NCBI GenBank assembly: GCA_965655095.1
Contig: OZ296659.1
Location: forward strand, 33,294,001-33,358,000
Source of the DNA: Haplodiscus bocki
Lineage: Eukaryota
Direction of reading: 5' to 3'
DNA: 64,000 nucleotides
Under the pieces are notes generated by a model, which was not told the origin of the DNA, ran no database searches, and saw only the letters and a list, made by a program, of their open reading frames with translations. A program made the position numbers and the translations under genes. Shown here piece by piece: positions 1-64,000 of this stretch (position 1 is its first letter; each line of letters opens with the position of its first letter).

Positions 1-2944
1 GAAAAAGCCAAGCCGATATTACGGAAGTTTCCAAAAGTGACAAGATTGCCGAAAGTGCCAAAGGTGGCGGAAAATCCGACATTGCTAGTATTGCAGAACT
101 TTTCCTGACTGCTGAAAATTCCAAAATTGCTGAGATTGCCAGTATTGCCGGAAATGTCAGAATTGCTGAATTTTCCGAAAAAGGTGAGTTTGCCGTTTTT
201 GCCAAGATTAACCAAAATGCTTTGATTTTCGAGATTACGGAACTTGCTGAAGTTTGCGAAATTTCCAAGATTGTCGCAAATTGTCATTTTGCCGCAACTG
301 CTAGTTTTGCCGAAGTTGTCGAGATTGCCGACATAGCCAAAAATGCCAAAGTTGCCTGAAGAGCCGAGAGTGCCAAGATTGGCCAAAATGCCGAAATTAA
401 CAAAAATGCCGACTTTGGCGACATTGTCAAGATTTTCGAAAGTGACGAAATTACCCAAAAATGACAGAGTTGCCGATTTTGCCGATAGAACCAATTTTGC
501 CGAGATTGCCGACCATGTTGATAATGCCGACATATACAGAATGTCCGAGGTTGCCGAGATTACCAAGATTGCCCATAATGGGGAAAATGCCGATGTTGCC
601 GAAACTGCCGAGGTTGCTGAAACTGCCGAAAATGCCGAAACTGCAGAGATTGCCAAGATGTCTGATATTGACGAAATTGCACATATTGGCTAAATTAACC
701 AGGTTGAACTTTTTGCCGAGATTGTCATAACTGCAGATATTGACGAAAAGGCCGAGATTGACGAAATTGCCAAGGTTGGCATCATTGCCGAAGTTTACGA
801 TATTGCCGAAATTAAGGTGACTGCCGAACTTGCCGAAATGGTCGATTTTGCCTATAGTACCATTTTTGCTGAGATTGCCGACAGTGTCGATAATACCGAC
901 ATTTCCAGAATGGCCGAGGTTGCCGAGATTGCCGAGATTGCCCTTATTTTCGAATTTGCCGATGTTGCCGAAACTGCCGAGAATGCTGAATCTGCCGAAA
1001 TTGCCGAAACTGCCGAGATTGCCAAATGTCCGCAAATGACGAAGTTGCATAAAATGACTAGACTGCCAGAAATGCCGAGATTGCCGTTCTTGCTGAGGCT
1101 GACTAAAATGCTGATATTGCCGAGTTTACGGAAATTTCCTGAAGCGCCAAGATTGCCAAAAATTCTGAAAATGGCGGAATTGCCGATATTGCTGGTTTTG
1201 CTGGAAGTTTCGAAATTGCCGAACTTTGCGAATTTGACGAGATTGCCTGTATTGCCGAAAAGGCCAGAAATGCTGAAACTTCCAAAAAAGGCGAGTAGGC
1301 CGTTTTTGCCTACATTGCACAAAATGGTCAGATTTTTGAGATTGCGAAACTTGCTGAGATTGCCAAAAATGACAAGATTCTCACAACTTGCTATGTTGCC
1401 CAATGTGCTGATTCTGCCGAAGTTGTCGAGATTGCCGACAATGCCAAAATGCCAAGATTGCCGAAAGTGCCGAGAGTGTCAAGATTGCTCAGAATGCCAA
1501 ATTTTAACAATAATGCCGACTTCGGCAACATTGTCAAAATTTCCGATGGTGCCGAAATTATCGAGAATGCCAGAGTTGCCAATATTGCAGAGATTGGGCA
1601 AGTTGCCGATTTTGGCTAAATTGCCAAACTTGCAGAGGTTGCCCAACAGGCCGAGATTGCCGATTCTGCCGAGATTGTCAATAAGTCCGGAAATGACGAA
1701 GTTGCCTATATTGCCGAGATTGCCAAAAATGCCCAGATAGCCGTTTTTGCCGAGACTGCCGATATTACCGAAGTTTCAAAAAGTGACAAGAATGCCGAAA
1801 TTGCCAAAAGTGGCGAATTTGTCGAGATTGCAAGTATTGCCGAGAACGTCCAGACTGCCAAACTTGCCGAAATTACCAAGATTGCCAGTATTGCCGAAAT
1901 TGTCAGAGTTGCCAAAAATTCCAAAATTGTCGAAGTTGCCGTTTTTGCCGAGACTGCCGAAACTGCCGAGAAAACCTGGCTACCGAGATTTTTGAGATTG
2001 CCGAACTTGTTGAGATTGCGAAAAAACCAAGATTGTCGCAACTTGTCATATTTGTGAAATTGATGTTTTTTCCGAAGTTGCCGAGATTGCCGAAAGAGCC
2101 AAAGATACCAAGATTGCCGAAAGTGCGGAGGGTGTCAAGGTTGCCCACAAGGCCGATTATATAAATAATGCCGATTTTGGCAAAATTGTCAAGATTTCCG
2201 ATGTTGCCGAATTTACCGAGAATGGCAGAGTTGCCGATTTTGCAGAGATTAAGAAGTTTCGCGATTTTGCCGAAATTGCCAAATTTGCAGAAGTTGCCCA
2301 ACAGGCCGAGATTGCCGAAACTGCCGAGATTGTCAAAATGTCCGGAAATGACGAAGTTGCCTACGTTGCCGAGATTGCCAAAATGCCCAGACTGCCGATA
2401 TTACCCAAGTTTCAAAAAGTTGCAAGATTGCCAAAATTACCAAAATTGTTGAAAGTGCCGAGATTGCAAGTATTGCCGAAATTTCCAAAATTGTCGAAAT
2501 CACCGAGATTGCCAGTATTGCCGGAATTGTCACACTTGCCGAAATTTCCGAAATTGTCGAGGTTGCCGTTTTTGCCGAGACTGCCGAAAATGTCGAGAAA
2601 GCCCTGGCTACCGAGATTTTCGAGATTGCCGAACTTGCTGAGATTGCGAAACTGCCAAGATTGTCGCAACTTGCCATGATCTCCAATCTGCTGATTCTGC
2701 CGAAGTTGTCGAGATTGCCGATATTGCCAAAAACACCAAGATTGCCCAAAGTGCCGAGAGTGTCAAGATTGCTCACAATGCCAAATATAACAATCATGCC
2801 GACTTTGGCAACATTGTCAAGATTCCGATAGTGCCGAATAAACCGAGAATGCCACAGTTGCCGATATTGCAGAGATTGTCAATATGTCCGGAAATGACGT
2901 AGTTGCCTACATTGCTGAGATTGCCAAAAAGCCGAGATTGCCGT

Positions 2945-5400
2945 TTTTGCCGAGACTGCCGACTGTACCGAAGTATCCAAAAGTGACAAGATTACTGAAA
3001 CTGCCAAAATTGGCGAAACTGCCGAGGTTGCAAGTATTGTCGAAAATGTTCAGACTGCCAAACTTGCCGAATTTAACGAGATTGCCAGTAGTGCCGAAAT
3101 TGTCAGAATTGCCGAAATTGTCAGAACTGCCGTAACTTCCGAAATTGTCGAGGTTGCCGTTTTTGCCGAGACTGCCGAAAATGCCGAGAAAACCTGGCTA
3201 CCGAGATTTTTGAGATTGCCGAACTTGTTGAGATTGCGAAAAAACCAAGATTGTCGCAACTTGTCATATTTGTGAAATTGATGTTTTTTCCGAAGTTGCC
3301 GAGATTGCCGAAAGAGCCAAAAAGCCTAGAATGTCAAGTTTGACAAAAAGGCTGAATATTACAAAAAAGCGGATTGTGGCTAGGTTGTCGAGATTGCTAG
3401 TAGTGCCGACTTTGCCGACATTGCCAGAACGGCCGATAATGCCGAGATTACCAAGATTGTCCATATCGGCGAACTTGCCGATATTGTCAAAACTGCCGAG
3501 ATTGCCAAAACTTCCGAATATGACAAGGTTGCCTAAGTTGCTGAGTTTGCCGAAAAAGCCAAAAGGCCGCTCTTGCCGAATTTGCCGATATTACGGAAGT
3601 TTCCAATAGTGCCCAGGTTGCCGAAAATGACAAAATTGGCGGAAATGCTGACGTTGCTAGTAGGCTAGTATTGCTGATAGTTTCCAGATTGCCCAATTTT
3701 CCGAAACTGCCGAGATTGCCAGTATTGCCAAAAACGTCAAAAATGCTGGAAGTGCCGAAAAAGGCTCGTTTGCCGTTCTTGCCGAGATTGCGAAACTCGC
3801 TGAGACTGCCAAAAATGCCAAAGATTGTCGCAACTTGCCATGTTGCCGAATGTGCTGTATCTGTCGAAATTGTCGAGAATGCCGATATAGCCTAAAATAC
3901 CAAGGTTTCCGAAAATGCCGAGAGTGTCAAGATTGCCCACGATGCCAAAAATAAAAATAATGACAACTTTCGCGACTTTGTCAAGGTTTCCGATAGTGCC
4001 GACATCACCGAGAATCCCAAAGTTGCCGATATTGCAGAGATTGCCAAAAAGACCGAGACTGTCGAAATTGCCAATGTTGTCATCTTTGTCGAAATTTACG
4101 AGATTGGCGAATTTCCGTGACTGCCGAACTTGCCGAGATTGTCGATAATTCCGATGATGACAATTTTGCCGAGACTGCCGACTGTACCAAAAGTATCTAA
4201 AAGTGACAAGATTGTCGAAATTGCCAAAATTGGCGAAACTGCCGAGGTTGCAAGTATTGTCGAAAATGTTCAGACTGCCAAACTTGCCGAATTTAACGAG
4301 ATTGCCAGTATTGCCGAAATTGTCAGAATTGCCGAAATTGTCAGAATTGCCGAAACTTCCGAAATTGTCGAAGTTGCCGTTTTTGCCGAGACTGCCGAAA
4401 ATGCCGAGAAAACCTGGCTACCGAGATTTTTGAGATTGCTGAACTTGTTGAGATTGCGAAAAAGGCAAGATTGTAGCAACTTGTCATATTTGTGAAATTG
4501 ATTTTTCCGAAGTTGCCGAGATTGCCGAAAGAGCCAAAAAGCCTAGAATGTCAAGTTTGACAAAAAGGCTGAATATTACAAAAAAGCGGATTGTGGCTAG
4601 GTTGTCGAGATTGCTAGTAGTGCCGACTTTGCCGACATTGCCAGAACGGCCGATAATGCCGAGATTACCAAGATTGTCCATATCGGCGAACTTGCCGATA
4701 TTGTCAAAACTGCCGAGATTGCCAAAACTTCCGAATATGACAAGGTTGCCTAAGTTGCTGAGTTTGCCGAAAAAGCCAAAAGGCCGCTCTTGCCGAATTT
4801 GCCGATATTACGGAAGTTTCCAATAGTGCCCAGGTTGCCGAAAATGACAAAATTGGCGGAAATGCTGACGTTGCTAGTAGGCTAGTATTGCTGATAGTTT
4901 CCAGATTGCCCAATTTTCCGAAACTGCCGAGATTGCCAGTATTGCCAAAAACGTCAAAAATGCTGGAAGTGCCGAAAAAGGCTCGTTTGCCGTTCTTGCC
5001 GAGATTGCGAAACTCGCTGAGACTGCCAAAAATGCCAAAGATTGTCGCAACTTGCCATGTTGCCGAATGTGCTGTATCTATCGAAATTGTCGAGAATGCC
5101 GATATAGCCTAAAATACCAACGTTTCCGAAAATGCCGAGAGTGTCAAGATTGCCCACGATGCCAAAAATAAAAATAATGACAACTTTCGCGACTTTTTCA
5201 AGATTTCCGATAGTGCCGACAATACGGAGAATCCCAAAGTTGCCGATATTGCAGAGATTAACCACATTGCCCGTATTGCCGAAGTTGCCAAAAAGGCCGA
5301 GATTGTCGAAATTGCCAATGTTGTCATCTTTGTCGAACTTGCCGAGATTGTCGATAATTCCGATGGTGACAATTTTGCCGAGATTGCCGACGATGTCGAA
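2945..5400 (+). repeat. Tandem duplication, period ~1217-1220 bp, 2 copies
   Basis: Identical or near-identical ORFs at 3331/4548, 3487/4704 and 3671/4888 (offset 1217) and 3050/4270 (offset 1220, before a 3-bp deletion). Confidence 0.9.
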
Positions 5401-5463
5401 ATTGCCGTCATTTCCAGAATGGCCGATATTACCGAGGTTACCAAGATTGCCCAAATTGGAGAA

Positions 5464-5586
5464 GCTGCCGAGATTGCCGGAACTGCCGAGATTGCCGGAA
5501 CTGCCGAGATTGCCGAAACTGCCGAGATTGGCGAAACTGCCGAGGTTGCTGAAACTGCCGAGATTTCCGGAACTGCCGAGATTGCC
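5464..5586 (+). repeat. Low-divergence 18-bp dimer tract (CTGCCGAGA-TTGCCG(G/A)AA)n; similar tracts at ~8150-8253, 9650-9753, 26115-26220, 28242-28347 and 29388-29493
   Basis: Directly visible: ctgccgagattgccggaactgccgagattgccggaactgccgagattgccgaaactgccgagattggcgaaactgccgagg... Confidence 0.9.
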
Positions 5587-8500
5587 AATATTTCCGAAGT
5601 TGACGAAATGGCTTAAAATGCCGAGATTGCCCAAATGTCGGGATTGCCTTTCTTGCCGAGATTGCCGATATCACAGAAGTTTCTAAAAGTGACAAGATTG
5701 CCGAAATTGCCAAAATTGGCGAAACTGCCGAGGTTGCAAGTATTGTCGAAAATGTGCAGACTGCCAAGCTTGCCGAAATTACCGAGATTGCCAGTATTGC
5801 CAAAATTTCTGAAACTGTCGAGGTTGCCGTTTTTTCCGAGACTGCCGAAAATGCCGAGAAACCCTGGCTTCCGAGATTTTCGAGATTGCCGAACTTCTTG
5901 AGATTGCGAAAGAGCCAACATTGTCGCAACTTGCCATGTTTCCGAAATTGATGATTTTTCCGAAATTGCCATGAATGTCGAGTTTGACAAAAAGGCTGAA
6001 TATTACAATATTGCTGAATGTGGCTAGGTTGTCGAGAGTGCTGATAGTGCCGACTTTGACGACATTGCCAGAACGGCCGATAATGCCGAGATTACCAAGA
6101 TTGCCCATATCGGCGAACTTACCGATTTTGTCAAAACTGCCGAGATTGCCAAGATGTCCGAAATTGACGAAATTGCATATCTTGGCTAGATTGCCAGAAA
6201 TGCCGAGATTGCCGTTCCTGCCGTGTTTGACGAAACTGCTGAGATTGCCGATATTACGGAGTTTTCCTAAAGTGCCACGATTGCCGAAAATTCTGAAATT
6301 GGCGGAATTTCCGATAATGCTAGTATTGCTGAAAGTTTCGAGATTGTCGAACTTTGCGGAATTGCCGAGATTGCCAGTTTTGCTGAAAAATCCAGAAAGG
6401 CTGAATATTCCGAAAGAGGCGAGTTTGCCGTTTTTGCCAAGATTGCACGAAATGCTGAGATTTTCGAGATTACGGAACTTGATGAGGTTTGCGAAAATGC
6501 CAAGATTGTCGCAAATTGCCATTTTGCCGAAACAGCTAATTTTGCCGAAGTTGTCGAGATTGACATTATAGCCAAAAATGTCAAGGTTGCCGAAAGTGCC
6601 GGGAGTGCTAAGGTTGCCCACAATGCCGAATATAACAATAATGCCGACTTTGGCATCAATGTCAAGATTTCCGATGAAGCCGAAATTACCGAGAATGCAG
6701 CAGTTGCCGATATTGCAGAGATTGTCAATATGTCCGGAAATGACGAAGTTGCCTACATTGCTGAGATTGCCAAAAAGCCTAGATTGCCGTTTTTGCCGAG
6801 ACTGCCGACTGTACCGAAGTATCCAAAAGTGACAAGATTACTGAAACTGCCAAAATTGGCGAAACTGCCGAGGTTGCAAGTATTGTCGAAAATGTCGAGA
6901 CTGCCAAACTTGCCGAAATTATCGAGATTGCCAGTAGTGCCGAAATTGTCAGAATTGCCGAAATTGTCAGAACTGCCGTAACTTCCGAAATTGTCGAGGT
7001 TGCCGTTTTTGCCGAGACTGCCGAAAATGCCGAGAAAACCTGGCTACCGAGATTTTTGAGATTGCCGAACTTGTTGAGATTGCGAAAAAACCAAGATTGT
7101 CGCAACTTGTCATATTTGTGAAATTGATGTTTTTTCCGAAGTTGCCGAGATTGCCGATATAGCCAAAAAAAGCCGAGATTGTCAAGTTTGACAAAAAGGC
7201 TGAATAATACAATAATGCGGAATGTGGCTAGGTTATCGAGATTGTTGATAGTGCCGACTTTGCCGACATTGACAGAACAGCCGATAATGCCAAGAATACC
7301 AAGATTGTCCATTTCGGCGAACTTGCCGATATATGTCGAACCTGCCGAGGATGCCAAAATGTCCGAAATTGACAAGATTGACTGAGTTGCTGATTTTGCC
7401 GAAAATGCCAAGAAGGCCGCTCTTGCCGAATTTGCCGATATTACGGAAGTTTCCAATAGTGCCCAGGTTGCCGAAAATGACAAAATTGGCGGAAATGCTG
7501 ACGTTGCTAGTAGGCTAGTATTGCTGATAGTTTCCAGATTGCCCAATTTTCCGAAACTGCCGAGATTGCCAGTATTGCCAAAAACGTCAAAAATGCTGGA
7601 AGTGCCGAAAAAGGCTCGTTTGCCGTTCTTGCCGAGATTGCGAAACTCGCTGAGACTGCCAAAAATGCCAAAGATTGTCGCAACTTGCCATGTTGCCGAA
7701 TGTGCTGTATCTATCGAAATTGTCGAGATTGCCGATATAGCCTAAGATACCAAGGTTTCCGAAATTGCCGAGAGTGTCAAGATTGCCAACGATGCCAAAT
7801 ATAACAATATTGCCGACTTTCGCGATTTGTCAAGGTTTCCGATAGTGCCGACATCACCGAGAAACCCAGAGTTGCCGAAATTGCAGAGATTAACCTAGTT
7901 GCCGGTTTTGCCGGAGTTGCCAAAATTGCAGAGGTTGCCAAAAAGGCCGAGATTGTCGAAATTGCCAATGTTGTCATCTTATTCGAAAGTTACGAGATTG
8001 GCGATTTTCCGTGACTGCCGAACTTGCCGAGATTGTCGATAATTCCGATGGTGATAATTTTGCCGAGATTGCCGACGGTGTCGAAATTGCCGACATTTCC
8101 AGAATGGCCGATATTACCGAGGTTACCAAGATTGCCCAAATTGGAGAAAATGCCGAGATTGCCGGAACTGCCGAGATTAACGAAACTGCCGAAAATGCCG
8201 AAACTGCCGATATTGGCGAAATTGCCGAGATTGCCGGAACTGCCGAGATTGCCAATATGTCCGAAGTTGACGAAATGGCTTAAAATGCCGAGATTGCCAA
8301 AATGCCCAGATTGCCGTTTTTGCCGAAACTGCCGACATTACCAAACTACCTAAAAGTGAAAAGATTGCCGAAATTGCCAAAATTGGCGAAACTGCCGAGG
8401 TTGCAAGTATTGTCGAAAATGTCCAGACTGCCAAGCTTGCCGAAATTACCGAGACTGCCAATATTGCCGAAAGTGTCAGAAATGCCGAAATTGTCAGAAT

Positions 8501-9064
8501 TGCCGAAACTTCCGAAATTGTCGAGGTTGCCGTTTTTGCCGAGCCTGCCGAAATAGCCGAGAAACCCTGGCTGCCGAGATTTTCGAGATTGCCGAAATTG
8601 TTGAGGTTGCGAAAAAACCAAGATTGTCGCAATTTGCCATCTTTCCGGAAATGATGATTTTTCCGAAGTTGCCGAGATTGCCGAAACAGCCAAAAAGGCC
8701 TATAATGTCAAGTTTGACAATAAGGCTGAATAATACAATAATGCGGAATGTGGCTAGGTTATCGAGATTGTTGATAGTGCCGACTTTGCCGACATTGACA
8801 GAACGGCCGATAATGCCGAGAATACCAAGATTGTCCATTTCGGCGAACTTGCCGATATATGTCGAACCTGCCGAGGATGCCAAAATGTCCGAAATTGACA
8901 AGATTGACTGAGTTGCTGATTTTGCCGAAAATGCCAAGAAGGCCGCTCTTGCCGAATTTGCCGATATTACGGAAGTTTCCAATAGTGCCCAGGTTGCCGA
9001 AAAAGACAAAATTGGAGGAAATGCCGACATTGCTAGTATTGCTGAAAGTTTCCAGATTCCCCAA

Positions 9065-11690
9065 TTTTCCGAAAATGCCGAGATTGCCAGTAATGGCAAA
9101 AAGGTCAAAAATGTTGAAAATTCCAAAAAAAGCTAGCTTGCCGTTTTTGCCGAGATTGCGAAACTTGCTTAGTTTGCCAAAATTGCCAAGATTGTCGCAA
9201 TTTGCCATGTTGCCGAATGTGCTATATCTGCCGAATTTGCCGAGATTGCCGATATAGCCTAAAATACCAAAATTTCTGAAAATGCCGAGAGTGTCCAGAT
9301 TGCCCACAATGCCAAATACAACATTAATGCCAACTTTCGCGACTTTGTCAAGATTTCCGATAGTGCCAACCTTACCGAGAATCCCAGAGTTGCCGATATT
9401 GCAGAGATTAACCTAGTTGCCGGTTTTGCCGGAGTTGCCAAAAAGGCCGAGATTGTCGAAATTGCCAATGTTGGCATCTTTGTCGAATTTTACGAGATTG
9501 GCGAAAATCCGTGACTGCTGAATTTGCCGAGATTGTTGATAATTCCGATGGTGACAAATTTGCCGAGATTGCCGACGGTGTCGAATTTGCCGAAATTTCC
9601 AGAATGGTCGATTTTACCGAGGTTACCAAGATTGCCCAAATTGGAGAAAATGCCGAGATTGCCGGAACTGCCGAGATTGCCGAAACTGCCGAGACTGCCA
9701 AAACTGCCGAGATTGCCGAAACTGCCGAGATTGCTGAAACTGCCGAGATTGCCAAAATGGCCGAAACTGAAGAAATAGCTTAAATTGTCGAGATTGCCAA
9801 AAAGACGAGATTGCCGTTGTTGCCGAGATTGCCGACATCAGCGAAGTTCCTAAAAGTGACAAGAGTGCCGAATTTGACTTAATTGGCGAAGATGCTGAGT
9901 TTTTCGAAACTGCCGAGATTGCCAAAGATGCCGAGATTGTCGTTCTTGCCGAGATTGCCAAAATTCAGAGGTTGCTAAAACAACCGAGATTGTCGGAAGT
10001 GCCAAGGTTGGCATCTTTGCCGAATTTTACGAGATTGCCGAAACTGCCGAGATTGCCGTTCTTGCCGAGATTTCTGATATTAGCGAAGTTTCCAAAAATT
10101 CCGAGATTGCCGAAATTGCCATACTTGCCAAAATTGCCGACATTTCCAGCATTGCCGAAACTGTCAGAGTTGCCGCAATTGTCGGTGTTGCCGAAGTTTC
10201 TGAAATTGTCAAGATTTCCCTTTTTGCCGAGGTTGCCGAAAAGGCTCAGAAAGCCCTGGCTACCGAGACTTCCGAGGTTGCCGAAATTGTTGAGATTGCG
10301 GAAATGCCAAGATTGTCGCAACTTGCCATATTTCCGAAATTGCTGGTTTTTCCGAAGTTGCCGAGATTGCAAGTTTTGCCGAAAATGTCCAGACTGCCAA
10401 ACGTGCCGAAATTGCCGAGATTGCCAGTATTGCCGAAATTGTTAGAAATGCCGAAAATGCCGAGATTGCCAGTGTTGCCGAAATTGTCCAGTTGGTGAAC
10501 TTGCCAAATTTTCCCAGATTGCCAGTATTGTCAAAAATGTCAGAATTGCCGAAATTTTCGAATATGTGGAGGTTGCCGTTTTTTCCCAGACTGCCGAACG
10601 AGCCGTGGAAGCCCTGGATACCGAGATTTTCGAGATTGCCGAACTTGTTGAGATTCGGCAAATGCCAAGATTGTCGCAACTTGCCATATTTCCGATAATA
10701 ATGATTTTTCCGAAGTTGCCGAGATTGCCGATAAAGGCAAAAAAAGCCGAGATTGCCAAGTTTGACAAAAAGGCTGAAAATTACAATATTGCGGGAAGTG
10801 GCTAGATTGTCGAGGTTGCTGATGGTGCCGAATTTGCCGACATTGACAGAACGGCCGATAATGCCGAGATTACCAAGGTTGTCCATGTCGGCGAACTTGC
10901 CGATATTGTCGAAACTGCCGAGATTGCCAAAAGGTCCAAATTGACAAGGTTGCCTAAGTTGTTGAGTTTGCCGAAAGTGGCAAGAAGGCCACTCTTGCCG
11001 AAATTGCCGTTATTACGGAAGTTTCCAATGCTAATAATGCTGAATGTTTCCAGATTGCACACTTTTCCGAAAATGCCGAGATTGCCAGTAATGGCAAAAA
11101 GGTCAAAAATGTTGAAAATTCCAAAAAAAGCTAGCTTGCCGTTTTTGCCGAGATTGCGAAACTTGCTTAGTTTGCCAAAATTGCCAAGATTGTCGCAATT
11201 TGCCATGTTGCCGAATGTGCTATATCTGCCGAATTTGCCGAGATTGCCGATATAGCCTAAAATACCAAAATTTCTGAAAATGCCGAGAGTGTCCAGATTG
11301 CCCACAATGCCAAATACAACATTAATGCCAACTTTCGCGACTTTGTCAAGATTTCCGATAGTGCCAACCTTACCGAGAATCCCAGAGTTGCCGATATTGC
11401 AGAGATTAACCTAGTTGCCGGTTTTGCCGGAGTTGCCAAAAAGGCCGAGATTGTCGAAATTGCCAATGTTGGCATCTTTGTCGAATTTTACGAGATTGGC
11501 GAAAATCCGTGACTGCTGAATTTGCCGAGATTGCTGATAATTCCGATGGTGACAAATTTGCCGAGGTTGCCGACGGTGTCGAATTTGCCGAAATTTCCAG
11601 ACTGGTTGATATTACCGAGGTTACCAAGATTTCCCAAATTGGAGAAACTGCCGAGATTGCCGGAACTGCCGAGATTGCCGAAACTGCTGA
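9065..11690 (+). repeat. Direct repeat of ~0.6 kb at offset 1998 bp (~9065-9690 and ~11063-11690), with a third partial copy near 11840-12000
   Basis: Identical ORFs 9259..9477 and 11257..11475; related ORFs 9511/11509; shared string aaaattccaaaaaaagctagcttgccg. Confidence 0.85.
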
Positions 11691-12340
11691 GATTGCCGAA
11701 TTTGTCGAGATTGCCAGTATTGCCGAAAGTTTCAGAATTGCCGAAATTGTCAGAATTGCTGAAACTTCCGAAATTGTCGAGGTTGCCGTTTTTGCCGAGA
11801 CTGCCGAAAATGCCGAGAAAACCTGGCTACCGAGATTTTTGAGATTGCGAAACTTGCTTAGTTTGCCAAAATTGCCAAGATTGTCGCAATTTGCCATGTT
11901 GCCGAATGTGCTATATCTGCCGAATTTGCCGAGATTGCCGATATAGCCTAAAATACCAAAATTTCTGAAAATGCCGAGAGTGTCAAGATTGCCCACAATG
12001 CCAATTATAACAATAACGCCGACTTTCGCGACTTTGCCAAGATTTCCGATAGTGCCGACATTACCGAGACTCCCAGAGTTGCCGATATTGCAGAGATTAA
12101 CCATGTTGCCGGTTTTGTCGAAGTTGCCAAAAAGGCCGAGATTGTCGAAATTGCCAATGTTGTCATCTTTGTCGAATTTTACGAGATTGGCGAATTTCCG
12201 TGACTGCCGAACTTGCCGAGATTGTCGATAATTCCGATGGTGACAATTTTGCCGAGATTGCCGACGATGTCGAAATTGCCGTCATTTCCAGAATGGCCGA
12301 TATTACCGAGGTTACCAAGATTGCCCAAATTGGAGAAGCT

Positions 12341-50200: not shown

Positions 50201-51622
50201 GAAAGTGTCGAGGTTGCCGTTTTTGCCGAGATTGCCCATAATGCGAGGAATTTCCAGGTTCACGAGATTTTCGAAACTGCCGAACCTGATGAGATTGGGA
50301 AATGCCAATTTTGTTGCAATTTGCCTTTTTGCCCAATCTGCTGATTCTGCCAAAGTTGTCGAGATTGCTGAAAAAACCAAAATTTCCAAACTTGCCGGAA
50401 GTGCCGATAGTGTCAAGATTAGCTAAAAAGTCGAATATAACAAAAATGCCGACTTTGGCGACTTTGTCAAGATTTCCGATAGTGCCGACATTATCGAGAA
50501 TGCCAGAGTTGCCGATATTGCAGAGATTAACCAGGTTGCCGGTTTTGCCGAAGTTGTCAAAATTGCAGAGATTACCGAAAATGGCGTGACTGCCGAACTT
50601 GCCGAGATTATCGATTTTGCCGATATTACCCAATTTGACGAGATTGCCGAAACTGCCGATATTACCGACATTGCTAGAATGGCCGATAGTTCCGAGTTTA
50701 CCAAGTTTGCCCATACTGGCGAAACTGTCGAAAAGGCCGAAACTGCCAGTTTTTCCGACTTTACCGTATTTGCCGAGATTGCCGAAACTTCCGAGATTGC
50801 CAGGATGTCCAAAATTGACGAGGTAGTCTAAGTTCCTGAGTTTGCTGAAAATGCCGAGTTTGCTAAAAATGTCAACATTTCCGATGTTGCCATGATTGCC
50901 GTTATTACCGAAGTTTCTGAAAGTGCCAAGATTGCCAAAAGTTTCAGAATTGCCGAAATCTCCGAAAATGTCGAGGTTGCCAATTTTGCCGAATTTGCCC
51001 AAAATGCGAAGAAATCCCAGGTTACCGAGATTTTCGAAACTGCCGAACTTGTTGAGATTGAGAAAGTGGCAATTTTGTCGAAATTTGCCATTTTGCCCAA
51101 CCTGCTCATTCTGCCGAAGTTGTCGAGAAAGCTGATAAAGTCAAGATTTCCGACCTTGCCGAAAGTGCCGAGGGTGTCAAGTTTGCCCACAATGCAAAAT
51201 ACAACAAAAATGCCGACTTTGGAAATGATGTCAGGATTTCCGATAGTGCCGAAATTACCGAGAACGCCAGAGTTGCCAAAAAAGTAGAGATTAACCAGGT
51301 TGCCGGTTTTGCTGAAGTTTACCAGATTGTCGAAAAAGCTGTGACTGCCGAACTTGCCGAAAATGTCGATATTGCCGACATTACCGAAATTAACGGGATT
51401 GCCGAAACTGCCGATATTGCTGATTTTGCCAGAATGGCCGATAGTGCCGAGTTTGCCGAGATTGCCCATATTGGCGAAAATGCCGAAACTGCGAAGATTT
51501 CCGACTTGACCGTATTTGTCGAGATTGCCGAAACTTTCGAGGTTGCCAATATGTCCAAAATTGACGAGGCAGCCTAAGTTCCTGAGTTTGCCGAAACTGC
51601 CGAGATTTTCAGAACTGCCAAG
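47281..51622 (+). repeat. Near-perfect tandem duplication, period 2166 bp, 2 copies
   Basis: Identical ORFs 47333/49499, 47657/49823, 48015/50181, 48726/50892 and 49175/51341. Confidence 0.95.
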
Positions 51623-51631
51623 GTTGGAATT

Positions 51632-54600: not shown

Positions 54601-54744
54601 ATAGTGCCAAAATTACCGAGAACGCCAGAGTTGCCGAAAAAGCAGAGATTAAACAGGTTGCCGGTTTTGCTGAAGTTGCTAAAATTGCAGAGATTGCCAA
54701 AACGGCCGAGATTGTTGCAAATGCCAAGGTTGGCATCTTTGCCG
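51632..54744 (+). repeat. Near-perfect tandem duplication, period 1553 bp, 2 copies; related to the 2166-bp unit
   Basis: Identical ORFs 51665/53218, 52023/53576, 52634/54187 and 52698/54251. Confidence 0.95.
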
Positions 54745-57469
54745 AAGTTTACCAGGTTGTCGAGAATGCCGTGACTGCCGAACTTGCCGAAATTGTCGAT
54801 ATTGACGACATTACCGAAATTGACGGGATTGCCGAAACTGCCGATATTGCCGATATTGCCAAAATGGCCGACAGTGCTGAGTTTACCAAGATTGCCCAAT
54901 ATGGCGAATCTTCCGAAAATGCCGAAAGTGCCAATTTTTCCGACTTCACCCTATTTGCTGAGATTGCCGAAACTTCCGAGATTGCCAACATGTCCAAAAT
55001 TGACGAGGTAGCCTAAGTTCGTGAGTTTGCTGAAAATTCCGAGATTGCTAAAAAGCCGATATTTCCGATGTAGCCATGATTGCCGTTATTACCGAAGTTT
55101 CTAAAAGTGCCAAGATTGCTGAAATTGTCAGAATTGCCGAAATCTCCGAAAGTGCCGAGATTGTCAAGACTCGCCAAAGTGCCGAAGTCAACAAAATGCC
55201 GTTTTTGGCAACAATGTCAGGATTTCCGATAGTGCCGAAGTTACCGAGAGTGCCAGAGTTGCCGATAATGCAGAGATTAACCAGGTTGCCGGTTTTGCTG
55301 AAGTTGCCAAAAACGCAGAGATTGCCAAAATGGCCGAGATTGTCGGAAATGCCAAGGTGGGCATCTTTGCCGATGTTTACGACATTGCCGAAACTGCCGA
55401 GATTGCCGTTCTTTCAGAAATTGCCGATATTAGGGAAGTTTTCAAAATCTCCGAGATTGCCGAAATTGCGGAACTTGCCAAAATTGACGACATTTCCAGT
55501 ATTGCCGAAATTGTCAGAGTTGCTGACATTTCTGAAATTGTCAAGATTTCCGTTTATGCCGAGGTTGCCGAAAACGCTGAGGTTGCCTATATTACGGAAG
55601 TTTCCAAACGTGCCAAGATTGCCGAAAATGCCAAAATTGGCGGAAATGCTGACATAGCTAGTGTAGCCGAAAATTTTGAGATTGCGGATTTTTCGAAATT
55701 TACGAGAATGCCAGTATTGCCGAAATTGTCAGAATTGCCGAAATGTCCGAAATTGTCGAGGTTGCCGTTTTTGCCAAGAATGACGAAAATGCCGAGAAAT
55801 GCCAGGTTACCGAGAAAGCCCTGGCTACCGACATTTTTGAGATTGCCGAACTTGTTGAGAATGCGAAAATGCCAAGATTGTCGCAACTTGCCATGTTGCC
55901 CAATTTGCTGATTCTGCCGAATTTGTCGTGATTGCTGATATTGCCAAATATACCAAGATTGCCGAAAGTGCCGAGAGTGTCAATTTTGCCCACGATGCCG
56001 AATATAAAAATGATGTCGCCTTTGGCAACATTGTCAGGATTTACGATGGTGCCGAAATTACCGAGAATGCCAGAGTTGCCGATATTGCAGAGATTAACCA
56101 GGTTGCCGGTTTTGCTGGAGTTGCCAAAAACGCAGAGATTGCCAGAACGGCCGAGATTGTCGGAAATGCCAAGGTTGGCATCTTTGCCGAAGTTTACCAG
56201 ATTGCCGAAAATGCCGTGACTGCCCAACTTGCCGAGATTGTCGATTTTGCCGATATTATCGAATTTGACGAGATTGCCGACAGTGCCGGTATCGCCGACT
56301 TTGCCAGAATGGCCGATAGTGCCGAGTTTACCAGGATGGCCCATATTGGCGAAACTGCCGAAAACGCCGAAACTGCCAAGATTTCCGACTCCACCGTATT
56401 TTCCGAGATTTCCGAAACTTCCGAGATTGCCAGTATGTCCAAAATTGACGAGGTAGCCTAAGTTCCTGAGATTGCAGAAAATGCCGAGATTTTCAGAACT
56501 GCCATTGTTGGCATCTTTGCCGAAGTTTACCAGATTGTCGAATATGCCGTGACTGCCGAACTTGTCGAGATTGTCGATTTTGACGATATTACCGAGTTTG
56601 ACGAGATTGTCGAAACTGCCGATATTGCCGACATTGCCAGAATGGCCGATAGTGCCGAGTTTACCAAGGTTGCCCATTTTGGCGAAACTGTCGAAAATGC
56701 CGAAACTGCCAATTTTTCCGACTTCACCTTATTTGCCGAGATTGCCGAAACTTCCGAGATTGCTAACATGTACATAATTGACGAGGTAGCCTAAGTTCGT
56801 GAGTTTGCCGAAAATGCCGAGATTGCTAAAAATGACGATAGTTTCGATGTTGCCATGATTTCCGTTATTACCGAAGTTTCTGAAAATGCCAAGATTGCCG
56901 AAATTGTCAGAATTGCCGAATTCTCCGAAATTGTTGAGGTTGCCGTTTTTGCCGAGATTGCACAAAATGCGAAAAATTCCCAGGTTACCAAAATTTTCGA
57001 ACCTGCCGAACCTGTTGAAATTACGAAAATGCCAATTTTGTCGCAATTTCCCATTTTGCCCAATCGGCTGATTCTGCCAAAGTTGTCGAGATTGCTGATG
57101 AAGCCAAAATTTCGAATATTGCCGAAAGTGCCGAGAGTGTCAAGATTGGCTAAAAAGCCGGTTATAACAAAAATGCCGACTTTGGCGACTTTGTCAAGGT
57201 TTCCGATAGTGCCGACATTATCGAGAATGATAGAGTTGCCGATATTGCAGAGATTAACCAGGTTGACGGTTTTGCCGAAGTTGCCAAAATTGCAGAGATT
57301 GCCAAAAATGCCGAGATTTTCGGAACTGCCAAGTTTGGCATCTTTGCCGAAGTTTACCAAGTTGTCGAGAATGCCGTGACTGCCGAACTTGCCGAAATTG
57401 TCGATATTGACGACATTACCGAAATTGACGGGATTGCCGAAACAGCCGATATTGCCGATATTGCCAGAA

Positions 57470-60384
57470 TGGCCGATAGTGCCGAGTTTACCAAGATTGC
57501 CCATATTGGCGCAACTGCCGAAAATGCCGAAACTGCCATTATTTTCGACTTTACCTTTTTTGCCGAGATTGCCGAAATTTCCGAGAGTGCCAAAATGTCC
57601 AAAATTGACGAGGTAGCCTAAGTTTGTGAGTTTGCTGGAAAAGCCGAAATTGCTAAAACTGCCGAAATTTCCGATGTTGCCATGATTGCCTTTATTCCCG
57701 AAAATTCTGAAAAAGCCAAGATTGCCGAAATTTTCAGAGTTGCCGAAATCTCCGAAAATGTCAAGGTTGCCGTTTTTGCCGACATTGCCCAAAGTGCGAA
57801 AAACTCCAAGGTTACCGAGATTTTCGAAACTGCCGAACCTGTTGAGATTGCGAAAGTCCCACTTTTGTCGCAATTTGTCATTTTGCCCAATCTACTGATT
57901 CTGCCAAAGTTGTCGAGATTGCTGATGAAGCCAAAATTTCGAATATTGCCGAAAGTGCCGAGAATGTCAAGATTAGCTAAAAAGCCGGTCATAATGAAAA
58001 TGCCGACTTTGGCGACTTTGTCAAGATTTCCGATAGTGCCGACATTATCGAGAATGCTAGAGTTGCCGATATTGCAGAGATTAACCAGGTTGCCGGTTTT
58101 GCCGAAGTTGCCAAAATTGCAGAGATTGCCAAAAATGCCAAGGATTTCGGAACTGCCAAGTTTGGCATCTTTGCCGAAGTTTTCCAGATTGCCGAAAAAG
58201 CCGTGACTGCCGAACTTGCCGAGATTGTCGTTATTGCCGATATTACTCAATTTGACAAGATTGCCGAAACTGCCGGTATTGCCGACATTGCCGGAATGGC
58301 CGATAGTGCCGAGTTTACCAAGATTGCCCATATTGGCGCAACTGCCGAAAATGCCGAAACTGCCATTATTTTCGACTTTACCTTTTTTGCCGAGATTGCC
58401 GAAATTTCCGAGAGTGCCAAAATGTCCAAAATTGACGAGGTAGCCTAAGTTTGTGAGTTTGCTGGAAAAGCCGAAATTGCTAAAACTGCCGAAATTTCCG
58501 ATGTTGCCATGATTGCCTTTATTCCCGAAAATTCTGAAAAAGCCAAGATTGCCGAAATTTTCAGAGTTGCCGAAATCTCCGAAAATGTCAAGGTTGCCGT
58601 TTTTGCCGACATTGCCCAAAGTGCGAAAAACTCCAAGGTTACCGAGATTTTCGAAACTGCCGAACCTGTTGAGATTGCGAAAGTCCCACTTTTGTCGCAA
58701 TTTGTCATTTTGCCCAATCTACTGATTCTGCCAAAGTTGTCGAGATTGCTGATGAAGCCAAAATTTCGAATATTGCCGAAAGTGCCGAGAATGTCAAGAT
58801 TAGCTAAAAAGCCGGTCATAATAAAAATGCCGACTTTGGCGACTTTGTCAAGATTTCCGATAGTGCCGACATTATCGAGAATGCTAGAGTTGCCGATATT
58901 GCAGAGATTAACCAGGTTGACGGTTTTGCCGAAGTTGCCAAAATTGCAGAGATTGCCAAAAATGCCGAGATTTTCGGAACTGCCAAGTTTGGCATCTTTG
59001 CCGAAGTTTACCAGATTGCCGAAAAAGCCGTGACTGCCGATCTTGCCGAGATTGTCGTTATTGCCGATATTACTCAATTTGACAAGATTGCCGAAACTGC
59101 CGGTATTGCCGACATTGCCGGAATGGCCGATAGTGCCGAGTTTACCAAGATTGCCCATATTGGCGCAACTGCCGAAAATGCCGAAACTGCCATTATTTTC
59201 GACTTTACCTTTTTTGCCGAGATTGCCGAAATTTCCGAGAGTGCCAAAATGTCCAAAATTGACGAGGTAGCCTAAGTTTGTGAGTTTGCTGGAAAAGCCG
59301 AAATTGCTAAAACTGCCGAAATTTCCGATGTTGCCATGATTGCCTTTATTCCCGAAAATTCTGAAAAAGCCAAGATTGCCGAAATTTTCAGAGTTGCCGA
59401 AATCTCCGAAAATGTCAAGGTTGCCGTTTTTGCCGACATTGCCCAAAGTGCGAAAAACTCCAAGGTTACCGAGATTTTCGAAACTGCCGAACCTGTTGAG
59501 ATTGCGAAAGTCCCACTTTTGTCGCAATTTGTCATTTTGCCCAATCTACTGATTCTGCCAAAGTTGTCGAGATTGCTGATGAAGCCAAAATTTCGAATAT
59601 TGCCGAAAGTGCCGAGAATGTCAAGATTAGCTAAAAAGCCGGTCATAATAAAAATGCCGACTTTGGCGACTTTGTCAAGATTTCCGATAGTGCCGACATT
59701 ATCGAGAATGCTAGAGTTGCCGATATTGCAGAGATTAACCAGGTTGACGGTTTTGCCGAAGTTGCCAAAATTGCAGAGATTGCCAAAAATGCCGAGATTT
59801 TCGGAACTGCCAAGTTTGGCATCTTTGCCGAAGTTTACCAGATTGCCGAAAAAGCCGTGACTGCCGATCTTGCCGAGATTGTCGTTATTGCCGATATTAC
59901 TCAATTTGACAAGATTGCCGAAACTGCCGGTATTGCCGACATTGCCGGAATGGCCGATAGTGCCGAGTTTACCAAGATTGCCCATATTGGCGCAACTGCC
60001 GAAAATGCCGAAACTGCCATTATTTTCGACTTTACCTTTTTTGCCGAGATTGCCGAAATTTCCGAGAGTGCCAAAATGTCCAAAATTGACGAGGTAGCCT
60101 AAGTTTGTGAGTTTGCTGGAAAAGCCGAAATTGCTAAAACTGCCGAAATTTCCGATGTTGCCATGATTGCCTTTATTCCCGAAAATTCTGAAAAAGCCAA
60201 GATTGCCGAAATTTTCAGAGTTGCCGAAATCTCCGAAAATGTCAAGGTTGCCGTTTTTGCCGACATTGCCCAAAGTGCGAAAAACTCCAAGGTTACCGAG
60301 ATTTTCGAAACTGCCGAACCTGTTGAGATTGCGAAAGTCCCACTTTTGTCGCAATTTGTCATTTTGCCCAATCTACTGATTCTG
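57470..60384 (+). repeat. Homogenised tandem array of the 827-bp unit, ~3.5 copies, flanked by diverged 827-bp units
   Basis: ORFs 57682/58509/59336/60163 and 58203/59030/59857 at offset 827. Diverged neighbours start at 56855, 60961 and 61787. Confidence 0.95.
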
Positions 60385-63149
60385 TCGAAATTGTCGAGGT
60401 TGCTATATACCCAAAAACGCAAAGGTTGCCGGAAGTGCCGGGAAGGCCAAGAATGGCCAAAATATCGAATATAACAAAAATGACGACTTTGGCGACTTTG
60501 GCAAGATTTCCGATAGTGCCGACATTATCGACAATGCTAGAGTTTCCGATATTGCAGAGTTTAACCAGGTTGCCGGTTTTGTCGAAGTTGCCAAAATTTC
60601 AGAGGTTGCCAAAAATGCCGAGATTTTCGGAACTGCCGAGGTTGGCACCTTTGCCGAAGTTTACCAGGTTGTCGAAAATGCCGTGACTGCCGAACTTGCC
60701 GAAAGTGACGGTATTGCCGAAACTGTCGATATTGCCGATTTTGCCAGAATGGCCGATAGTGCCGAGTTTACCGAGATTGCCCATATTGGCGAAACTGCCA
60801 AAAATGCCGAAACTGCGAAGATTTCCGACTTTACCGTATTTGTCGAGATTGCCGAAACTTCCGAGATTGCAATATGTCCAAAATTGACGAGGTAGCCTAA
60901 GTTCCTGAGTTTGCCGAAAATGCCGAGATTGCTAAAACTGTCAAAATTTCCGATGTTGCCATGATTGCCTTTATTCCCGAAAATTCTGAAAAAGCCAAGA
61001 TTGCCGAAATTGTCAGAATTACGAAATCTCGGAAATTGTCGAGGTTGCCGTTTTTGCCGACATTGCCCAAAATGCGAAAAACTCCAACGTTACCGAGATT
61101 TTCGAAACTGCCGAACTTGTTGAGATTGCGAAAGTCCCACTTTTGTCGCAATTTGCCATTTTGCCCAATCTACTGATTCTGCCAAAGTTGTCGTGATTGC
61201 TGATGAAGCCAAAATTTCGAATATTGCCGAAAGTGCCGAGAGTGTCAAGATTGGCTAAAAAGCCGGTCATAACAAAAACGCCGATTTTGGCGACTTTGTC
61301 AAGATTTCCGATAGTGCCGACATTATCGAGAATGCTAGACTTGCCGATATTGCAGAGAATAACCAGGTTGCCGGTTTTTTCGAAGTTGCCAAAATTGCAG
61401 AGGTTGCCAAAAATGCCGAGATTTTCGGAACTGCCGAGGTTGGCACCTTTGCCGAAGTTTACCAGATTGTCGAAAATGCCGTGACTGCCGAACTTGCCGA
61501 AATTGTCGATTTTGCCGACATTACCGAAAGTGACGTTATAGCCGAAACTGTCGATTTTGCCGATTTTGCCAGAATGGCCGATAGTGCCGCGTTTACCGAG
61601 ATTGCCCATATTGGTGAAACTGCCAGAAATGCCGAAACTGCGAAGATTTCCGACTTTACCGTATTTGTCGAGATTGCCGAAACTTCCGAGAGTGCCAAAA
61701 TGTCCAAAATTGACGAGGTAGCCTAAGTTTGTGAGTTTGCCGAAAATGCCGAGTTTGCTGAAACTGCCGAAATTTCCGATGTTGCCATGATTGCCTTTAT
61801 TCCCGAAAATTCTGAAAAAGCCAAGATTGCCGAAATTGTCAGAATTGCCGAAGTCTCCGAAATTGTCGAGGTTGCCGTTTTCTCCGACATTGCCCAAAAT
61901 GCGAAAAACTCCAAGGTTACCGAGATTTTCGAAACTGCCGAACCTGTTGAGATTGCGAAAGTCCCAATTTTGTCGCAATTTGCCATTTTGCCCAATCGGC
62001 TGATTCTGCCAAAGTTGTCGAGATTGCTGATGAAGCCAAAATTTCGAATATTGCTGAAAGTGCCGAGAGTGTCAAGATTGGCTAAAAAGCCGGTCATAAT
62101 AAAAATGCCGACTTTGGCGACTTTGTCAAGATTTCCGATAGTGCCGACATTATCGAGAATGCTAGAGTTTCCGATATTGCAGAGTTTAACTAGGTTGCCG
62201 GTTTTGTCGAAGTTGCCAAAAATGCAGAGGTTGTCAAAAATGCCGATATTTTCGGAACTGCCAAGGTTGGCACCTTTGCCGAAGTTTACCAGATTGTCGA
62301 AAATGCCGTGACTGCCGAACTTGCCGAAATTGTCGATTTTGCCAACATTACCGAAAGTGACGGTATTGCCGAAACTGTCGGTATTGCCGATTTTGCCAGA
62401 ATGGCCGATAGTGCCGAGTTTACCGAGATTGCCCATATTGGCGAAACTGCCAAAATTGTCGGAACTGCGAAGATTTCCGATTTTACCGTATTTGTCGAGA
62501 TTGCCGAAACTTCCGAGATTGCCATTATGTCCAAAATTGACGAGGCAGCCCAAGTTCCTGAGTTTGCCGAAATTGCCGAGATTTTCTGAACTGCCAAGGT
62601 TGTCATCTTTGCCGAAGTTTATCAAATTGCCGAAAACGCCGTGAATGCCGAACTTGCCGAGATTGTCGATATTGCCGACATTATCGAAATTGAGGGGATT
62701 GCCGAAACTGCCGATATTGCCGACATTGCCAGAATGGCCGATATTGCCGAGTTTGCCAAGATGGACCTTATTGGCGAAACTGTCGAAAATGCCGAAACTG
62801 CCAATTTTTCCGACTTCACCTTATTTGCCGAGATTGACGAAACTTCCGAGATTGCCAATATGTCCAAAAATGACGAGGTAGCCTAAGTTCGTGAAATTGC
62901 CGAAAATGCCGAGGTTGCTAAAATTGTCGATATTTCAGATGTTGTCATACTTGCCGATTTTACCGAAGTTTCCAAAAGTGCCAAGATTGCCGAAATTGTT
63001 AGAATTGCAGAAGTCTCCGAAATTGTCGAGGTTGCGTTTTTGCCGAGATTGCCCGAAATGCGAAGAATTCCCACTTTACCGACGTTTTCGAAACTGCCGA
63101 ACTTGTTGAGATTGCGAATTCGCCAATTTTGACGAAATTATCGAGATTG

Positions 63150-63830
63150 TCAGTGTTGCCGAAATTGTCCAGTTGGTGAACATGCCAAATTGCCGAGATT
63201 GCCAATATTGCTGAAATTGTCAGAATTACCGAAGTTTCCGAAAAAGTCGATGTTGCCGTTTTTACCGAGACTGTTGAAAATGCCGAGAATTCCCAGGTTA
63301 CCGAAGGTTTCGAGAATGCCGAACTTGCTGAAATTTCGAAAAAGGCAAGATTGTCGCAATTTGCCATTTTTCCGAAATTGATTTTTCCGAAGTTGCCGAG
63401 ATTGCCGATATAGCCAAAAAAAACCGAGATTGTTAAGTTTGACAAAAAAGGCTGAATAATACAATAAAGCGGAATGTGGCTAGGTTGTCGAGATTGCTGA
63501 TAGTGCCGACATTGCCGACAATGACAGAACGGCCGATAATGCCGAGATTACCAAGATTGTCCATATCGGCGAACTTGCCGATATTTTTGAAACTGACCAG
63601 ATTGCCAAAATGTCCGAAAACTACAAGGTTGCCTAAGTCGCTGAACTTGCCGAATATGCCAAGAAGGCCGCTATTGCTGAAATTGCCTATATTACGGAAG
63701 TTTTCAATGGTGCCGAGATTGCCGAAAATGAAAAACTGGCGGAAATGCCGACATTGCTAGTTTTGCTGAAAATTTCGAGATTGCCCTAATTTCCGAAAAT
63801 GCCGAGATTGCCAGTGTTGCTGAAAATGTC
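63150..63830 (+). repeat. Return to subfamily-A-type sequence, followed by B-type sequence again at ~63850-64000
   Basis: A landmarks ttgtccagttggtgaac (~63166), gaatgtggctaggttgtcgag (~63472) and cagaacggccgataatgcc (~63525). B-type aatgcgaagaa..cccaggttaccgag and cccaacctgctcattctgcc follow at the end. Confidence 0.75.
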
Positions 63831-64000
63831 AGAATTGCCGAAATTTCCGAGATTGTCGAGGTTGCCAATTTTGCCGAGTCTGCCCAAAATGCGAAGAATT
63901 CCCAGGTTACCGAGATTTTCGAATTTGCCGAACTTGTTGAGATTGAGAAAGTTTACATTTTGTCGCAGTTTGCCATTTTGCCCAACCTGCTCATTCTGCC

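What the first reader, a model, noticed from the sequence alone, without database searches (positions are those of the whole stretch)
1..64000. Multi-tier satellite: 9-bp monomer, 18-bp dimer, 333/827-bp units, and kb-scale higher-order repeats each with its own period
Seen: a 9-mer array in which specific variant monomers keep a fixed order over hundreds of bases, so the effective repeat is a long string of 9-mers. At least eight recent local duplications each have a different period (about 1217, 2108, 1198, 1146, 1721, 2166, 1553 and 827 bp) and only 2-4 copies. Established: complex satellites can grow from short motifs (mouse major satellite has an internal 9-bp substructure), and higher-order repeats arise by unequal exchange or replication-based duplication. 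Inference: this is an actively turning-over, probably centromeric or pericentromeric eukaryotic satellite that has not settled on one dominant higher-order repeat. I do not recognise it as a named family.
Basis: partly seen in the sequence, partly recalled or inferred. Interest (0 to 1): 0.7.

Follow-up and report, generated by a model that had tools for sequence, protein, structure and literature searches.

The report
Degenerate 9-bp satellite with young duplications
The whole window is non-coding satellite DNA built from a worn-down 9-base motif that keeps growing by copying kilobase-sized pieces of itself; it is a well-preserved new example of a known kind of repeat, and nothing in the sequence shows that it is a centromere.

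Summary
All 64 kb are one uninterrupted, one-stranded 9-bp-periodic array with consensus ATTGCCGAR. Adjacent 9-mers are only about 53% alike.

Under them lies an irregular composite unit of about 1-2 kb. It recurs 20-36 times at 78-95% identity, in two subfamily domains.

The youngest events are simple tandem duplications with 0-2 mismatches. Each identical core equals the period plus 7-45 nt, and most breakpoints lie inside older, diverged paralogs. This points to unequal exchange between imperfect copies. About 32% of the window lies in copies that differ by 0.2% or less, so "actively turning over" is supported, if the assembly is right (no reads could be laid).

It is not coding.

The family amounts to roughly 2 Mb in dozens of loci on at least ten chromosome-scale contigs, often several per contig. 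The largest block is about 0.85 Mb on C11. The centromere reading is therefore untested, and the scatter argues against one shared centromere repeat.

The host is a bilaterian; other agents' notes say an acoel worm. No paper printing this repeat was found, and the scan's earlier notes hold no record of it on other DNA.

It is a new member of a known kind; the closest analogue is human HSat2/3.

The parts
1..64000 (+). Uninterrupted 9-bp-periodic satellite, consensus ATTGCCGAR, all in one orientation. It is part of an array of about 140-150 kb at C12:33.29-33.43 Mb.
   Evidence: array extent.
2000..34000 (+). Subfamily domain A (edges approximate). 2-kb bins are 85-94% alike within the domain and 70-84% alike to domain B.
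34000..64000 (+). Subfamily domain B (edges approximate).
12311..13990 (+). B-type island inside domain A, 93-96% alike to 48.0-55.2 kb.
3285..5196 (+). A 695-bp segment repeated at lag 1217 with 2 mismatches; an A-B-A layout, not a full tandem copy.
9065..11601 (+). A 539-bp segment repeated at lag 1998 with 2 mismatches.
14260..18484 (+). Two-copy tandem duplication, period 2108. Identical core 2117 nt with 1 mismatch and 9-nt junction identity. Flanks are 83-88% alike over 210-230 nt at the same lag.
21516..23927 (+). Two-copy tandem duplication, period 1198. Core 1214 nt with 0 mismatches and 16-nt junction identity. An older copy at lag 1812 (92.7%) lies upstream.
25105..29913 (+). About four copies of a unit of about 1.1 kb with unit lengths 1139, 988 and 1146. 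The last step has a core of 1171 nt with 12 mismatches.
37078..42098 (+). Three copies, period 1721. Copies 2 and 3 are identical over 1766 nt; copies 1 and 2 differ at 25 sites. Each copy holds a 333-bp internal repeat of 2.1 copies at 86%.
47280..51622 (+). Two-copy tandem duplication, period 2166. Core 2177 nt with 0 mismatches and 11-nt junction identity. The right flank is 89% alike over 150 nt.
51632..54744 (+). Two-copy tandem duplication, period 1553. Core 1560 nt with 2 mismatches and 7-nt junction identity. The right flank is 90% alike over 270 nt.
56445..62590 (+). Array of about 7.4 copies of an 827-bp unit. About 3.5 central copies are near-identical (57467-60384); the outer copies are 88-92% alike.

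Best explanation
This is non-coding satellite DNA of a bilaterian animal.

Shown by the sequence:
- A simple 9-bp repeat (18-bp dimer in the younger arrays) has decayed here to about 53% identity between neighbouring units.
- A stretch of about 1-2 kb of that decayed tract became the working unit. It now fills the array in two subfamily domains at 78-94% identity.
- The newest layer is a set of local tandem duplications of 0.8-2.2 kb in the window (up to 2.9 kb elsewhere in the family). Their copies are 99-100% identical, and their identical cores equal one period plus a short junction identity.
- At most junctions the sequence on either side of the breakpoint is an older, 80-90% similar paralog at the same distance.

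Inferred: each new duplication arises by unequal exchange, or by replication template switching, between imperfect paralogs lying one period apart. That explains why every block has its own period and only 2-7 copies. The absence of transposon insertions in pure satellite, inside transposon-rich DNA, fits fast turnover. The DNA most likely has no sequence-specific cellular function and persists as neutral or selfish heterochromatic repeat. A role at a centromere is possible for the big clusters but is not shown.
For: - Periodicity, one-strandedness and degeneracy.
- The periods exist.
- Cores are 100% identical and their length is 1.00-1.02 times the period for 2108, 1198, 1146, 2166 and 1553. 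For the young 1721 event the core is 1766 nt.
- Junction views show diverged paralogous flanks and 7-25 nt of identity at the breakpoints.
- Layered identity classes cover 99.6% of the window.
- Recurring composite unit. Domains.
- The same behaviour appears in every other sampled piece of the family, with periods 1258, 1260, 1345, 2242, 2557, 2739, 2825 and 2871.
- Not coding: no frame shows an excess of third-codon-position change; stops occur every 37-50 codons in all six frames; there are no protein relatives and no Rfam match.
- Flanks hold Gypsy-like and Maverick-like genes.
Against: - No reads could be laid, so the youngest, identical duplications rest on the assembly alone.
- The exchange mechanism is inferred from junction anatomy. 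In three events the older similarity lies almost wholly to the right of the core, which a crossover at a random point would not predict and which I cannot explain.
- Lack of function is a default, not a result. Older paralogs differ 1.4-1.5 times more at the loose motif positions than at the core positions. This leaves a weak hint of constraint.
Confidence: 0.8

Rival explanations
1. The array is the centromeric or pericentromeric satellite of this chromosome. It binds the kinetochore foundation or the flanking heterochromatin.
For: - It lies in the interior of the contig, at 42% of 79.3 Mb.
- C2, C7, C11 and C12 each have one large cluster.
- It is free of transposons in a transposon-rich setting.
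- Its layered young and old copies resemble known centromere arrays.
Against: - Dozens of loci exist, several per contig. Only small ones were seen on C1 and C3-C6, and none was seen in the truncated listings for C8 and C10.
- The total is only about 2 Mb.
- The C12 cluster is about 190 kb and is split into two inverted blocks.
- An HSP70-family gene lies about 31 kb from the C11 block.
- There are no chromatin, Hi-C or cytological data.
Confidence: 0.2
2. The array is, or descends from, a protein-coding tri-peptide repeat. The minus strand reads Gly-Asn-Leu/Phe, a collagen-like Gly-X-Y pattern.
For: - Minus-strand ORFs reach 429 aa.
- One ORF passes the Pfam Collagen cut-off, at 34.4 bits against 27.2.
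Against: - The Pfam hit reflects glycine at every third residue only; there are almost no prolines.
- Frames break about every 330 bp.
- ORFs of the 827-bp array overlap one another in different frames.
- Differences between paralogs show no third-position excess in any frame.
- The protein word search found nothing.
- The arrays are 40-850 kb long.
Confidence: 0.03
3. The identical kilobase duplications are assembly artefacts, or represent one haplotype only, rather than fixed features of the genome.
For: - Copies with 0-2 mismatches cannot be told apart by sequence alone.
- Reads were not available.
- 200-N gaps lie just outside the 308-kb contig that holds both blocks.
Against: - The events are 2.4-5 kb in total, shorter than typical long reads, and lie inside gap-free sequence.
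- Their cores equal the period exactly, with clean junctions in older paralogs. That looks biological.
- Older layers of the same kind, at 88-98%, cannot be artefacts.
Confidence: 0.07
4. The family was seeded at its many loci by a mobile element that carries a short 9-bp minisatellite, and the arrays then grew in place.
For: - Dozens of small loci of a few monomers are scattered over at least ten contigs.
- Other notes report that the genome is rich in rolling-circle and Maverick elements.
Against: - The two array edges I could read border a common old dispersed repeat on one side and near-unique DNA on the other.
- Neither flank recurs beside another array.
- Only two edges were testable.
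Confidence: 0.12

Closest known systems
Human satellites 2 and 3 (HSat2/HSat3)
   Same: - They derive from a short simple repeat, (CATTC)n, now degenerate.
- They have chromosome-specific subfamilies.
- Kilobase-scale units sit on top of the short motif, for example a 1.77-kb HSat2 unit (PMC4022460).
- Here, likewise, each array has its own dimer variant: C11 GAG/AAG, C2 GAG/GAT, and motif position 9 in the window.
   Different: - The motif is 9 bp, not 5 bp, and there is no sequence likeness.
- The host is an invertebrate.
- The total is about 2 Mb, not tens of Mb.
- The long unit here is irregular, and local periods last only 2-7 copies.
- The chromosomal setting is unknown.
Higher-order-repeat satellites such as primate alpha satellite
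   Same: Diverged base units, much more similar multi-unit blocks, growth by unequal exchange, and younger layers inside older ones.
   Different: - The base unit is 9 bp, not about 171 bp.
- No single higher-order unit is homogenised over the array.
- There is no known link to the centromeric histone.
Mouse major satellite
   Same: A longer unit that grew out of diverged 9-bp sub-repeats.
   Different: The mouse unit is a settled 234 bp, homogenised genome-wide and pericentromeric on all chromosomes. Here the long unit is 1-2 kb, irregular and specific to each locus.
Caenorhabditis elegans MSAT1 / MINISAT1
   Same: The published guide RNA against it, cggcaatttcggcaattgc (PMC6446544), is two tandem 9-mers of the same core as this satellite's minus strand. 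17 places in the window match it within 2 mismatches.
   Different: MSAT1 is described as a 226-bp unit at about 207 dispersed loci. I could not see its full sequence. A 19-nt likeness between a nematode and this animal is most likely chance or convergence.

Membership tests
Satellite DNA (long tandem array of non-coding units) | Head-to-tail repeats in one orientation over tens to hundreds of kb | tested here: met
   The 64-kb window is uninterrupted. The array is about 140-150 kb long, and blocks elsewhere reach about 0.85 Mb.
Satellite DNA (long tandem array of non-coding units) | Non-coding | tested here: met
   Stops occur in all frames. There is no third-position signal, no protein relatives and no Rfam family.
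Higher-order-repeat (HOR) satellite | One multi-monomer unit repeated many times at 95-100% identity across the array | tested here: not met
   Each period holds for only 2-7 copies and differs from block to block. The shared unit of about 1-2 kb is irregular and 78-90% alike.
Higher-order-repeat (HOR) satellite | Base monomers far more diverged than the multi-monomer blocks | tested here: met
   53% identity between neighbouring 9-mers against 85-100% between kilobase blocks.
Centromeric satellite | Occupied by the centromeric histone or kinetochore | not testable with these tools
Centromeric satellite | One main site per chromosome, at the primary constriction | tested here: inconclusive
   C2, C7, C11 and C12 have one large cluster each, but contigs carry several loci, and only small loci were seen on C1 and C3-C6. 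The listings were cut at 100 rows.
Minisatellite | Unit of about 9-100 bp in arrays of 0.5-30 kb | tested here: not met
   The unit size fits, but the arrays are 40-850 kb.
Collagen-like coding repeat | Open Gly-X-Y frame kept by selection, rich in proline | tested here: not met
   The frame breaks about every 330 bp. There is no codon-position signal, and the ORFs are almost free of proline.

The most novel reading that the evidence does not exclude
The large interior clusters of this family (C2, C7, C11, C12) are the centromeres of those chromosomes in an acoel. The conserved T-G-C-C-G-A core, spaced every 9 bp on one strand, is a binding box for a centromere or heterochromatin protein. This would be the first centromere sequence known for the group, and the centromere repeat would differ between chromosomes.
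Probability: 0.1. Interest if true: 0.6.

Novelty: new member of a known kind. Interest (0 to 1): 0.3.

Why it matters
The array shows plainly how a complex satellite is built. The short motif, the long composite unit and the newest duplications can all be read in one 64-kb stretch. The breakpoints of five to six very recent events are resolved to the base and lie in older, imperfect copies. That gives direct sequence support for unequal exchange between diverged paralogs as the step that creates new periods.

I found no published description of satellites for this animal group, so the family is also a ready FISH and ChIP probe for finding its centromeres and heterochromatin. Beyond that it is an ordinary satellite, and it opens no long-standing question.

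Tried and rejected
- Constraint on the motif. Differences between kilobase paralogs looked twice as frequent at positions 1, 2, 5 and 9 as at positions 3, 4 and 8. When only isolated mismatches are counted, the effect is 1.06-fold in the youngest class (n = 83) and 1.4-1.5-fold in the older ones. The strong signal came mostly from clustered mismatches, probably patches that are in phase but not homologous. I do not claim constraint.
- CpG decay. The C6-G7 pair is not more changeable than other positions, so there is no sign of germ-line methylation. The numbers are small.
- Coding origin. Rejected; see the rival explanations.
- RNA families. None found.
- Mobile-element carrier. The two readable array edges share no flank with other arrays.
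- A phase-continuity test at the junctions turned out to be circular for tandem copies. I replaced it with direct views of the junctions.
- Literature by sequence. Six 15-mers of the consensus on both strands gave only a C. elegans guide RNA and one unrelated primer. Searches for acoel satellites gave nothing relevant.
- Sequencing runs.
- More genome DNA. I could not read the two edges of the main array (33.284-33.294 and 33.432-33.438 Mb) or the C2 and C7 arrays.
- Species. The exact BiP protein is held only in an unnamed ENA metagenome assembly.
Full report
**What is there.** The window is G000:C12:33,294,001-33,358,000 on a 79.3-Mb contig of a 1.5-Gb genome. G+C is even at 0.44-0.455. Identity is 0.53 at lags 9, 18, 27 ... 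54 and 0.13-0.34 at every other lag. The core TGCCGA occurs 1550 times on the + strand and 3 times on the - strand, with 12.5 expected. 87% of its spacings are multiples of 9, and the phase holds for about 330 bp on average. No 150-bp window falls below 0.38 identity at lag 9, so nothing interrupts the 64 kb.

The position matrix reads A-T-T-G-C-C-G-A-R, with T3, C6 and A8 best kept. Of 5294 in-phase monomers, 951 are distinct, and the consensus makes up 4.4%. The base repeat is therefore real, far beyond chance, and badly worn.

**The tiers.** The 18-bp tier is faint in the window (0.538 against 0.530). It rests on motif position 9 alone, where identity is 0.23 at lag 9 and 0.34 at lag 18. 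TRF finds short runs of 18-, 27-, 36-, 45- and 54-bp units, and a 333-bp unit of 2.1 copies at 86%.

So do further ones: 1998, 1139/988, 1806, 1842 and 1812.

Self-alignment shows that 99.6% of the window has a partner of at least 300 bp elsewhere in the window at 70% identity or more. A bin-by-bin map splits the window into two domains, A (about 2-34 kb) and B (about 34-64 kb). Bins are 85-94% alike within a domain and 70-84% alike between domains. A B-type island sits at 12.3-14.0 kb. 400-bp probes recur 20-36 times at 78-95% identity with spacings of 0.6-2.9 kb. There is thus an irregular composite unit of about 1-2 kb under the young duplications.

**How the young layer arose.** Lag profiles show cores that are 100% identical, with sharp edges. 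For five simple events the core length is 1.00-1.02 times the period:

| Period | Core (nt) | Mismatches |
|---|---|---|
| 2108 | 2117 | 1 |
| 1198 | 1214 | 0 |
| 1146 | 1171 | 12 |
| 2166 | 2177 | 0 |
| 1553 | 1560 | 2 |

In the 1721-bp triplet, copies 2 and 3 are identical over 1766 nt, and copies 1 and 2 differ at 25 sites. A core of one period plus 7-45 nt is what a single duplication leaves behind; a conversion tract would have an arbitrary length.

The three-way junction views show that the sequence to the left of copy 1 resembles the end of the copy, and the sequence to the right of copy 2 resembles its start. That similarity is 80-90% over 70-270 nt in most events, and short or nearly absent in the 1146 event. 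The switch falls in a shared stretch of 7-25 nt. The sequence therefore shows that most breakpoints lie in older paralogs one period apart.

I infer that the events come from unequal exchange or template switching between those imperfect copies. This also explains why each block inherits its own period. About 20.5 kb (32%) of the window lies in copies that differ by 0.2% or less.

**The family in the genome.** Samples taken every 20 kb show the array running from between 33.284 and 33.294 Mb to between 33.432 and 33.438 Mb. A second block of about 40 kb lies at 33.138-33.177 Mb on the opposite strand. Its edges are abrupt. That block, and the far part of the main array, share only motif-level likeness with the window.

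Every sampled piece has its own kilobase period: 1258 (four copies), 1260, 1345, 2242, 2557, 2739, 2825 and 2871.

The largest block is C11:48.78-49.64 Mb on the minus strand. There the 9-mers are 72% alike, and the unit is an 18-bp dimer, ATTGCCGAG ATTGCCAAG.

A three-core pattern has 1535 hits in the genome and none in the reversed control. The window holds 47, which suggests about 2 Mb in all. Hits lie on C1-C7, C9, C11 and C12, and often at several places per contig. Large clusters sit at C2:66.43-66.90, C7:62.69-62.84, C11 and C12. The listings were cut at 100 rows, so later contigs are under-sampled.

**Surroundings.** The flanks carry Gypsy-like reverse transcriptase and integrase genes, and a Maverick-like capsid and integrase. 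The two readable array edges border a common old dispersed repeat and near-unique DNA; neither recurs beside another array. An HSP70-family gene lies about 31 kb from the C11 block.

**Not a gene.** All six frames carry 430-589 stops. Minus-strand ORFs of up to 429 aa read Gly-Asn-Leu/Phe triplets. One passes the Pfam Collagen cut-off, but only because glycine falls at every third residue. Differences between paralogs show no third-position excess in any frame. The protein word search found nothing, and Rfam found nothing.

**Constraint on the motif.** This is not established. The first result, a two-fold difference between positions, fades once only isolated mismatches are counted. The CpG inside the motif is not hypermutable.

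**Host.** The mitochondrial COX1 on the last contig gives the conserved serines only if AGR is read as Ser, with TGA read as Trp. That is a bilaterian invertebrate code, not a cnidarian one. This contradicts the earlier notes that say coral. It fits the many notes that say acoel, which I did not otherwise verify.

**Comparison with known repeats.** The nearest analogue is human HSat2/3. That family is a degenerate pentamer with chromosome-specific subfamilies and kilobase units (PMC4022460). The array fails the test for a settled higher-order repeat.

No paper prints this repeat, and the one acoel genome paper I read describes no satellites (PMC9911081). A C. elegans MSAT1 guide RNA happens to contain two 9-mers of the same core (PMC6446544). 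I treat this as a lead only.

**Verdict.** The turnover reading is supported, and the centromere reading is untested and weakened by the scatter of loci. This is a new member of a known kind, of modest interest.

Noticed in passing
L003-L005 = C12:33,138,458-33,177,225 (minus-strand motif): A second block of the same 9-bp family, about 40 kb long, lies about 110 kb upstream of the main array in the opposite orientation. The DNA between them is rich in transposons. This may be an old inversion with one break inside the array.
   Followed up: partly
L003:1042-1241 and L015:5301-5500: 200-N scaffold gaps lie a few kb outside both satellite blocks. Both blocks and the DNA between them therefore form one contig of about 308 kb, whose placement rests on scaffolding.
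   Followed up: no
L031-L033 = C11:49.28-49.48 Mb; C2:66.78-66.83 Mb (pattern hits only): Each large array has its own 18-bp dimer. On C11, GAG alternates with AAG (motif position 7). On C2, GAG alternates with GAT or GAC. In the window, only position 9 alternates.
   Followed up: partly
window 57618-58700 (-) and other minus-strand ORFs: ORFs of 290-429 aa read Gly-X-Y triplets, and one passes the Pfam Collagen gathering score. Automatic annotation could call false collagen-like genes in this satellite.
   Followed up: yes
window 21516, 47280, 51632 (left edges of three duplications): In three of the five simple duplications, the older similarity at the same lag lies almost wholly to the right of the identical core. 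A crossover at a random point in a homology block would not give this one-sided pattern. It is unexplained.
   Followed up: partly
L021 = C6626:13114-17412: Mitochondrial COX1 is very divergent and needs TGA = Trp and AGR = Ser. ARAGORN with bacterial settings found no tRNA in 4.3 kb.
   Followed up: partly
L035 = C10:34,024,697-34,029,511: An intronless BiP/GRP78-type HSP70 gene ends in HDEF in place of the usual KDEL or HDEL retention signal. The exact protein is on record only in ENA assembly ERZ26859043.
   Followed up: no
L016:2-5581: A Maverick/Polinton-like element about 100 kb to the right of the window carries a double-jelly-roll capsid ORF, an integrase, and a 769-aa ORF with an endonuclease VII motif.
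   Followed up: no
window 997-62911 (17 sites): The published C. elegans MSAT1 guide RNA (PMC6446544) matches the satellite's 9-mer pair within 2 mismatches. Whether this is more than chance was not tested.
   Followed up: partly
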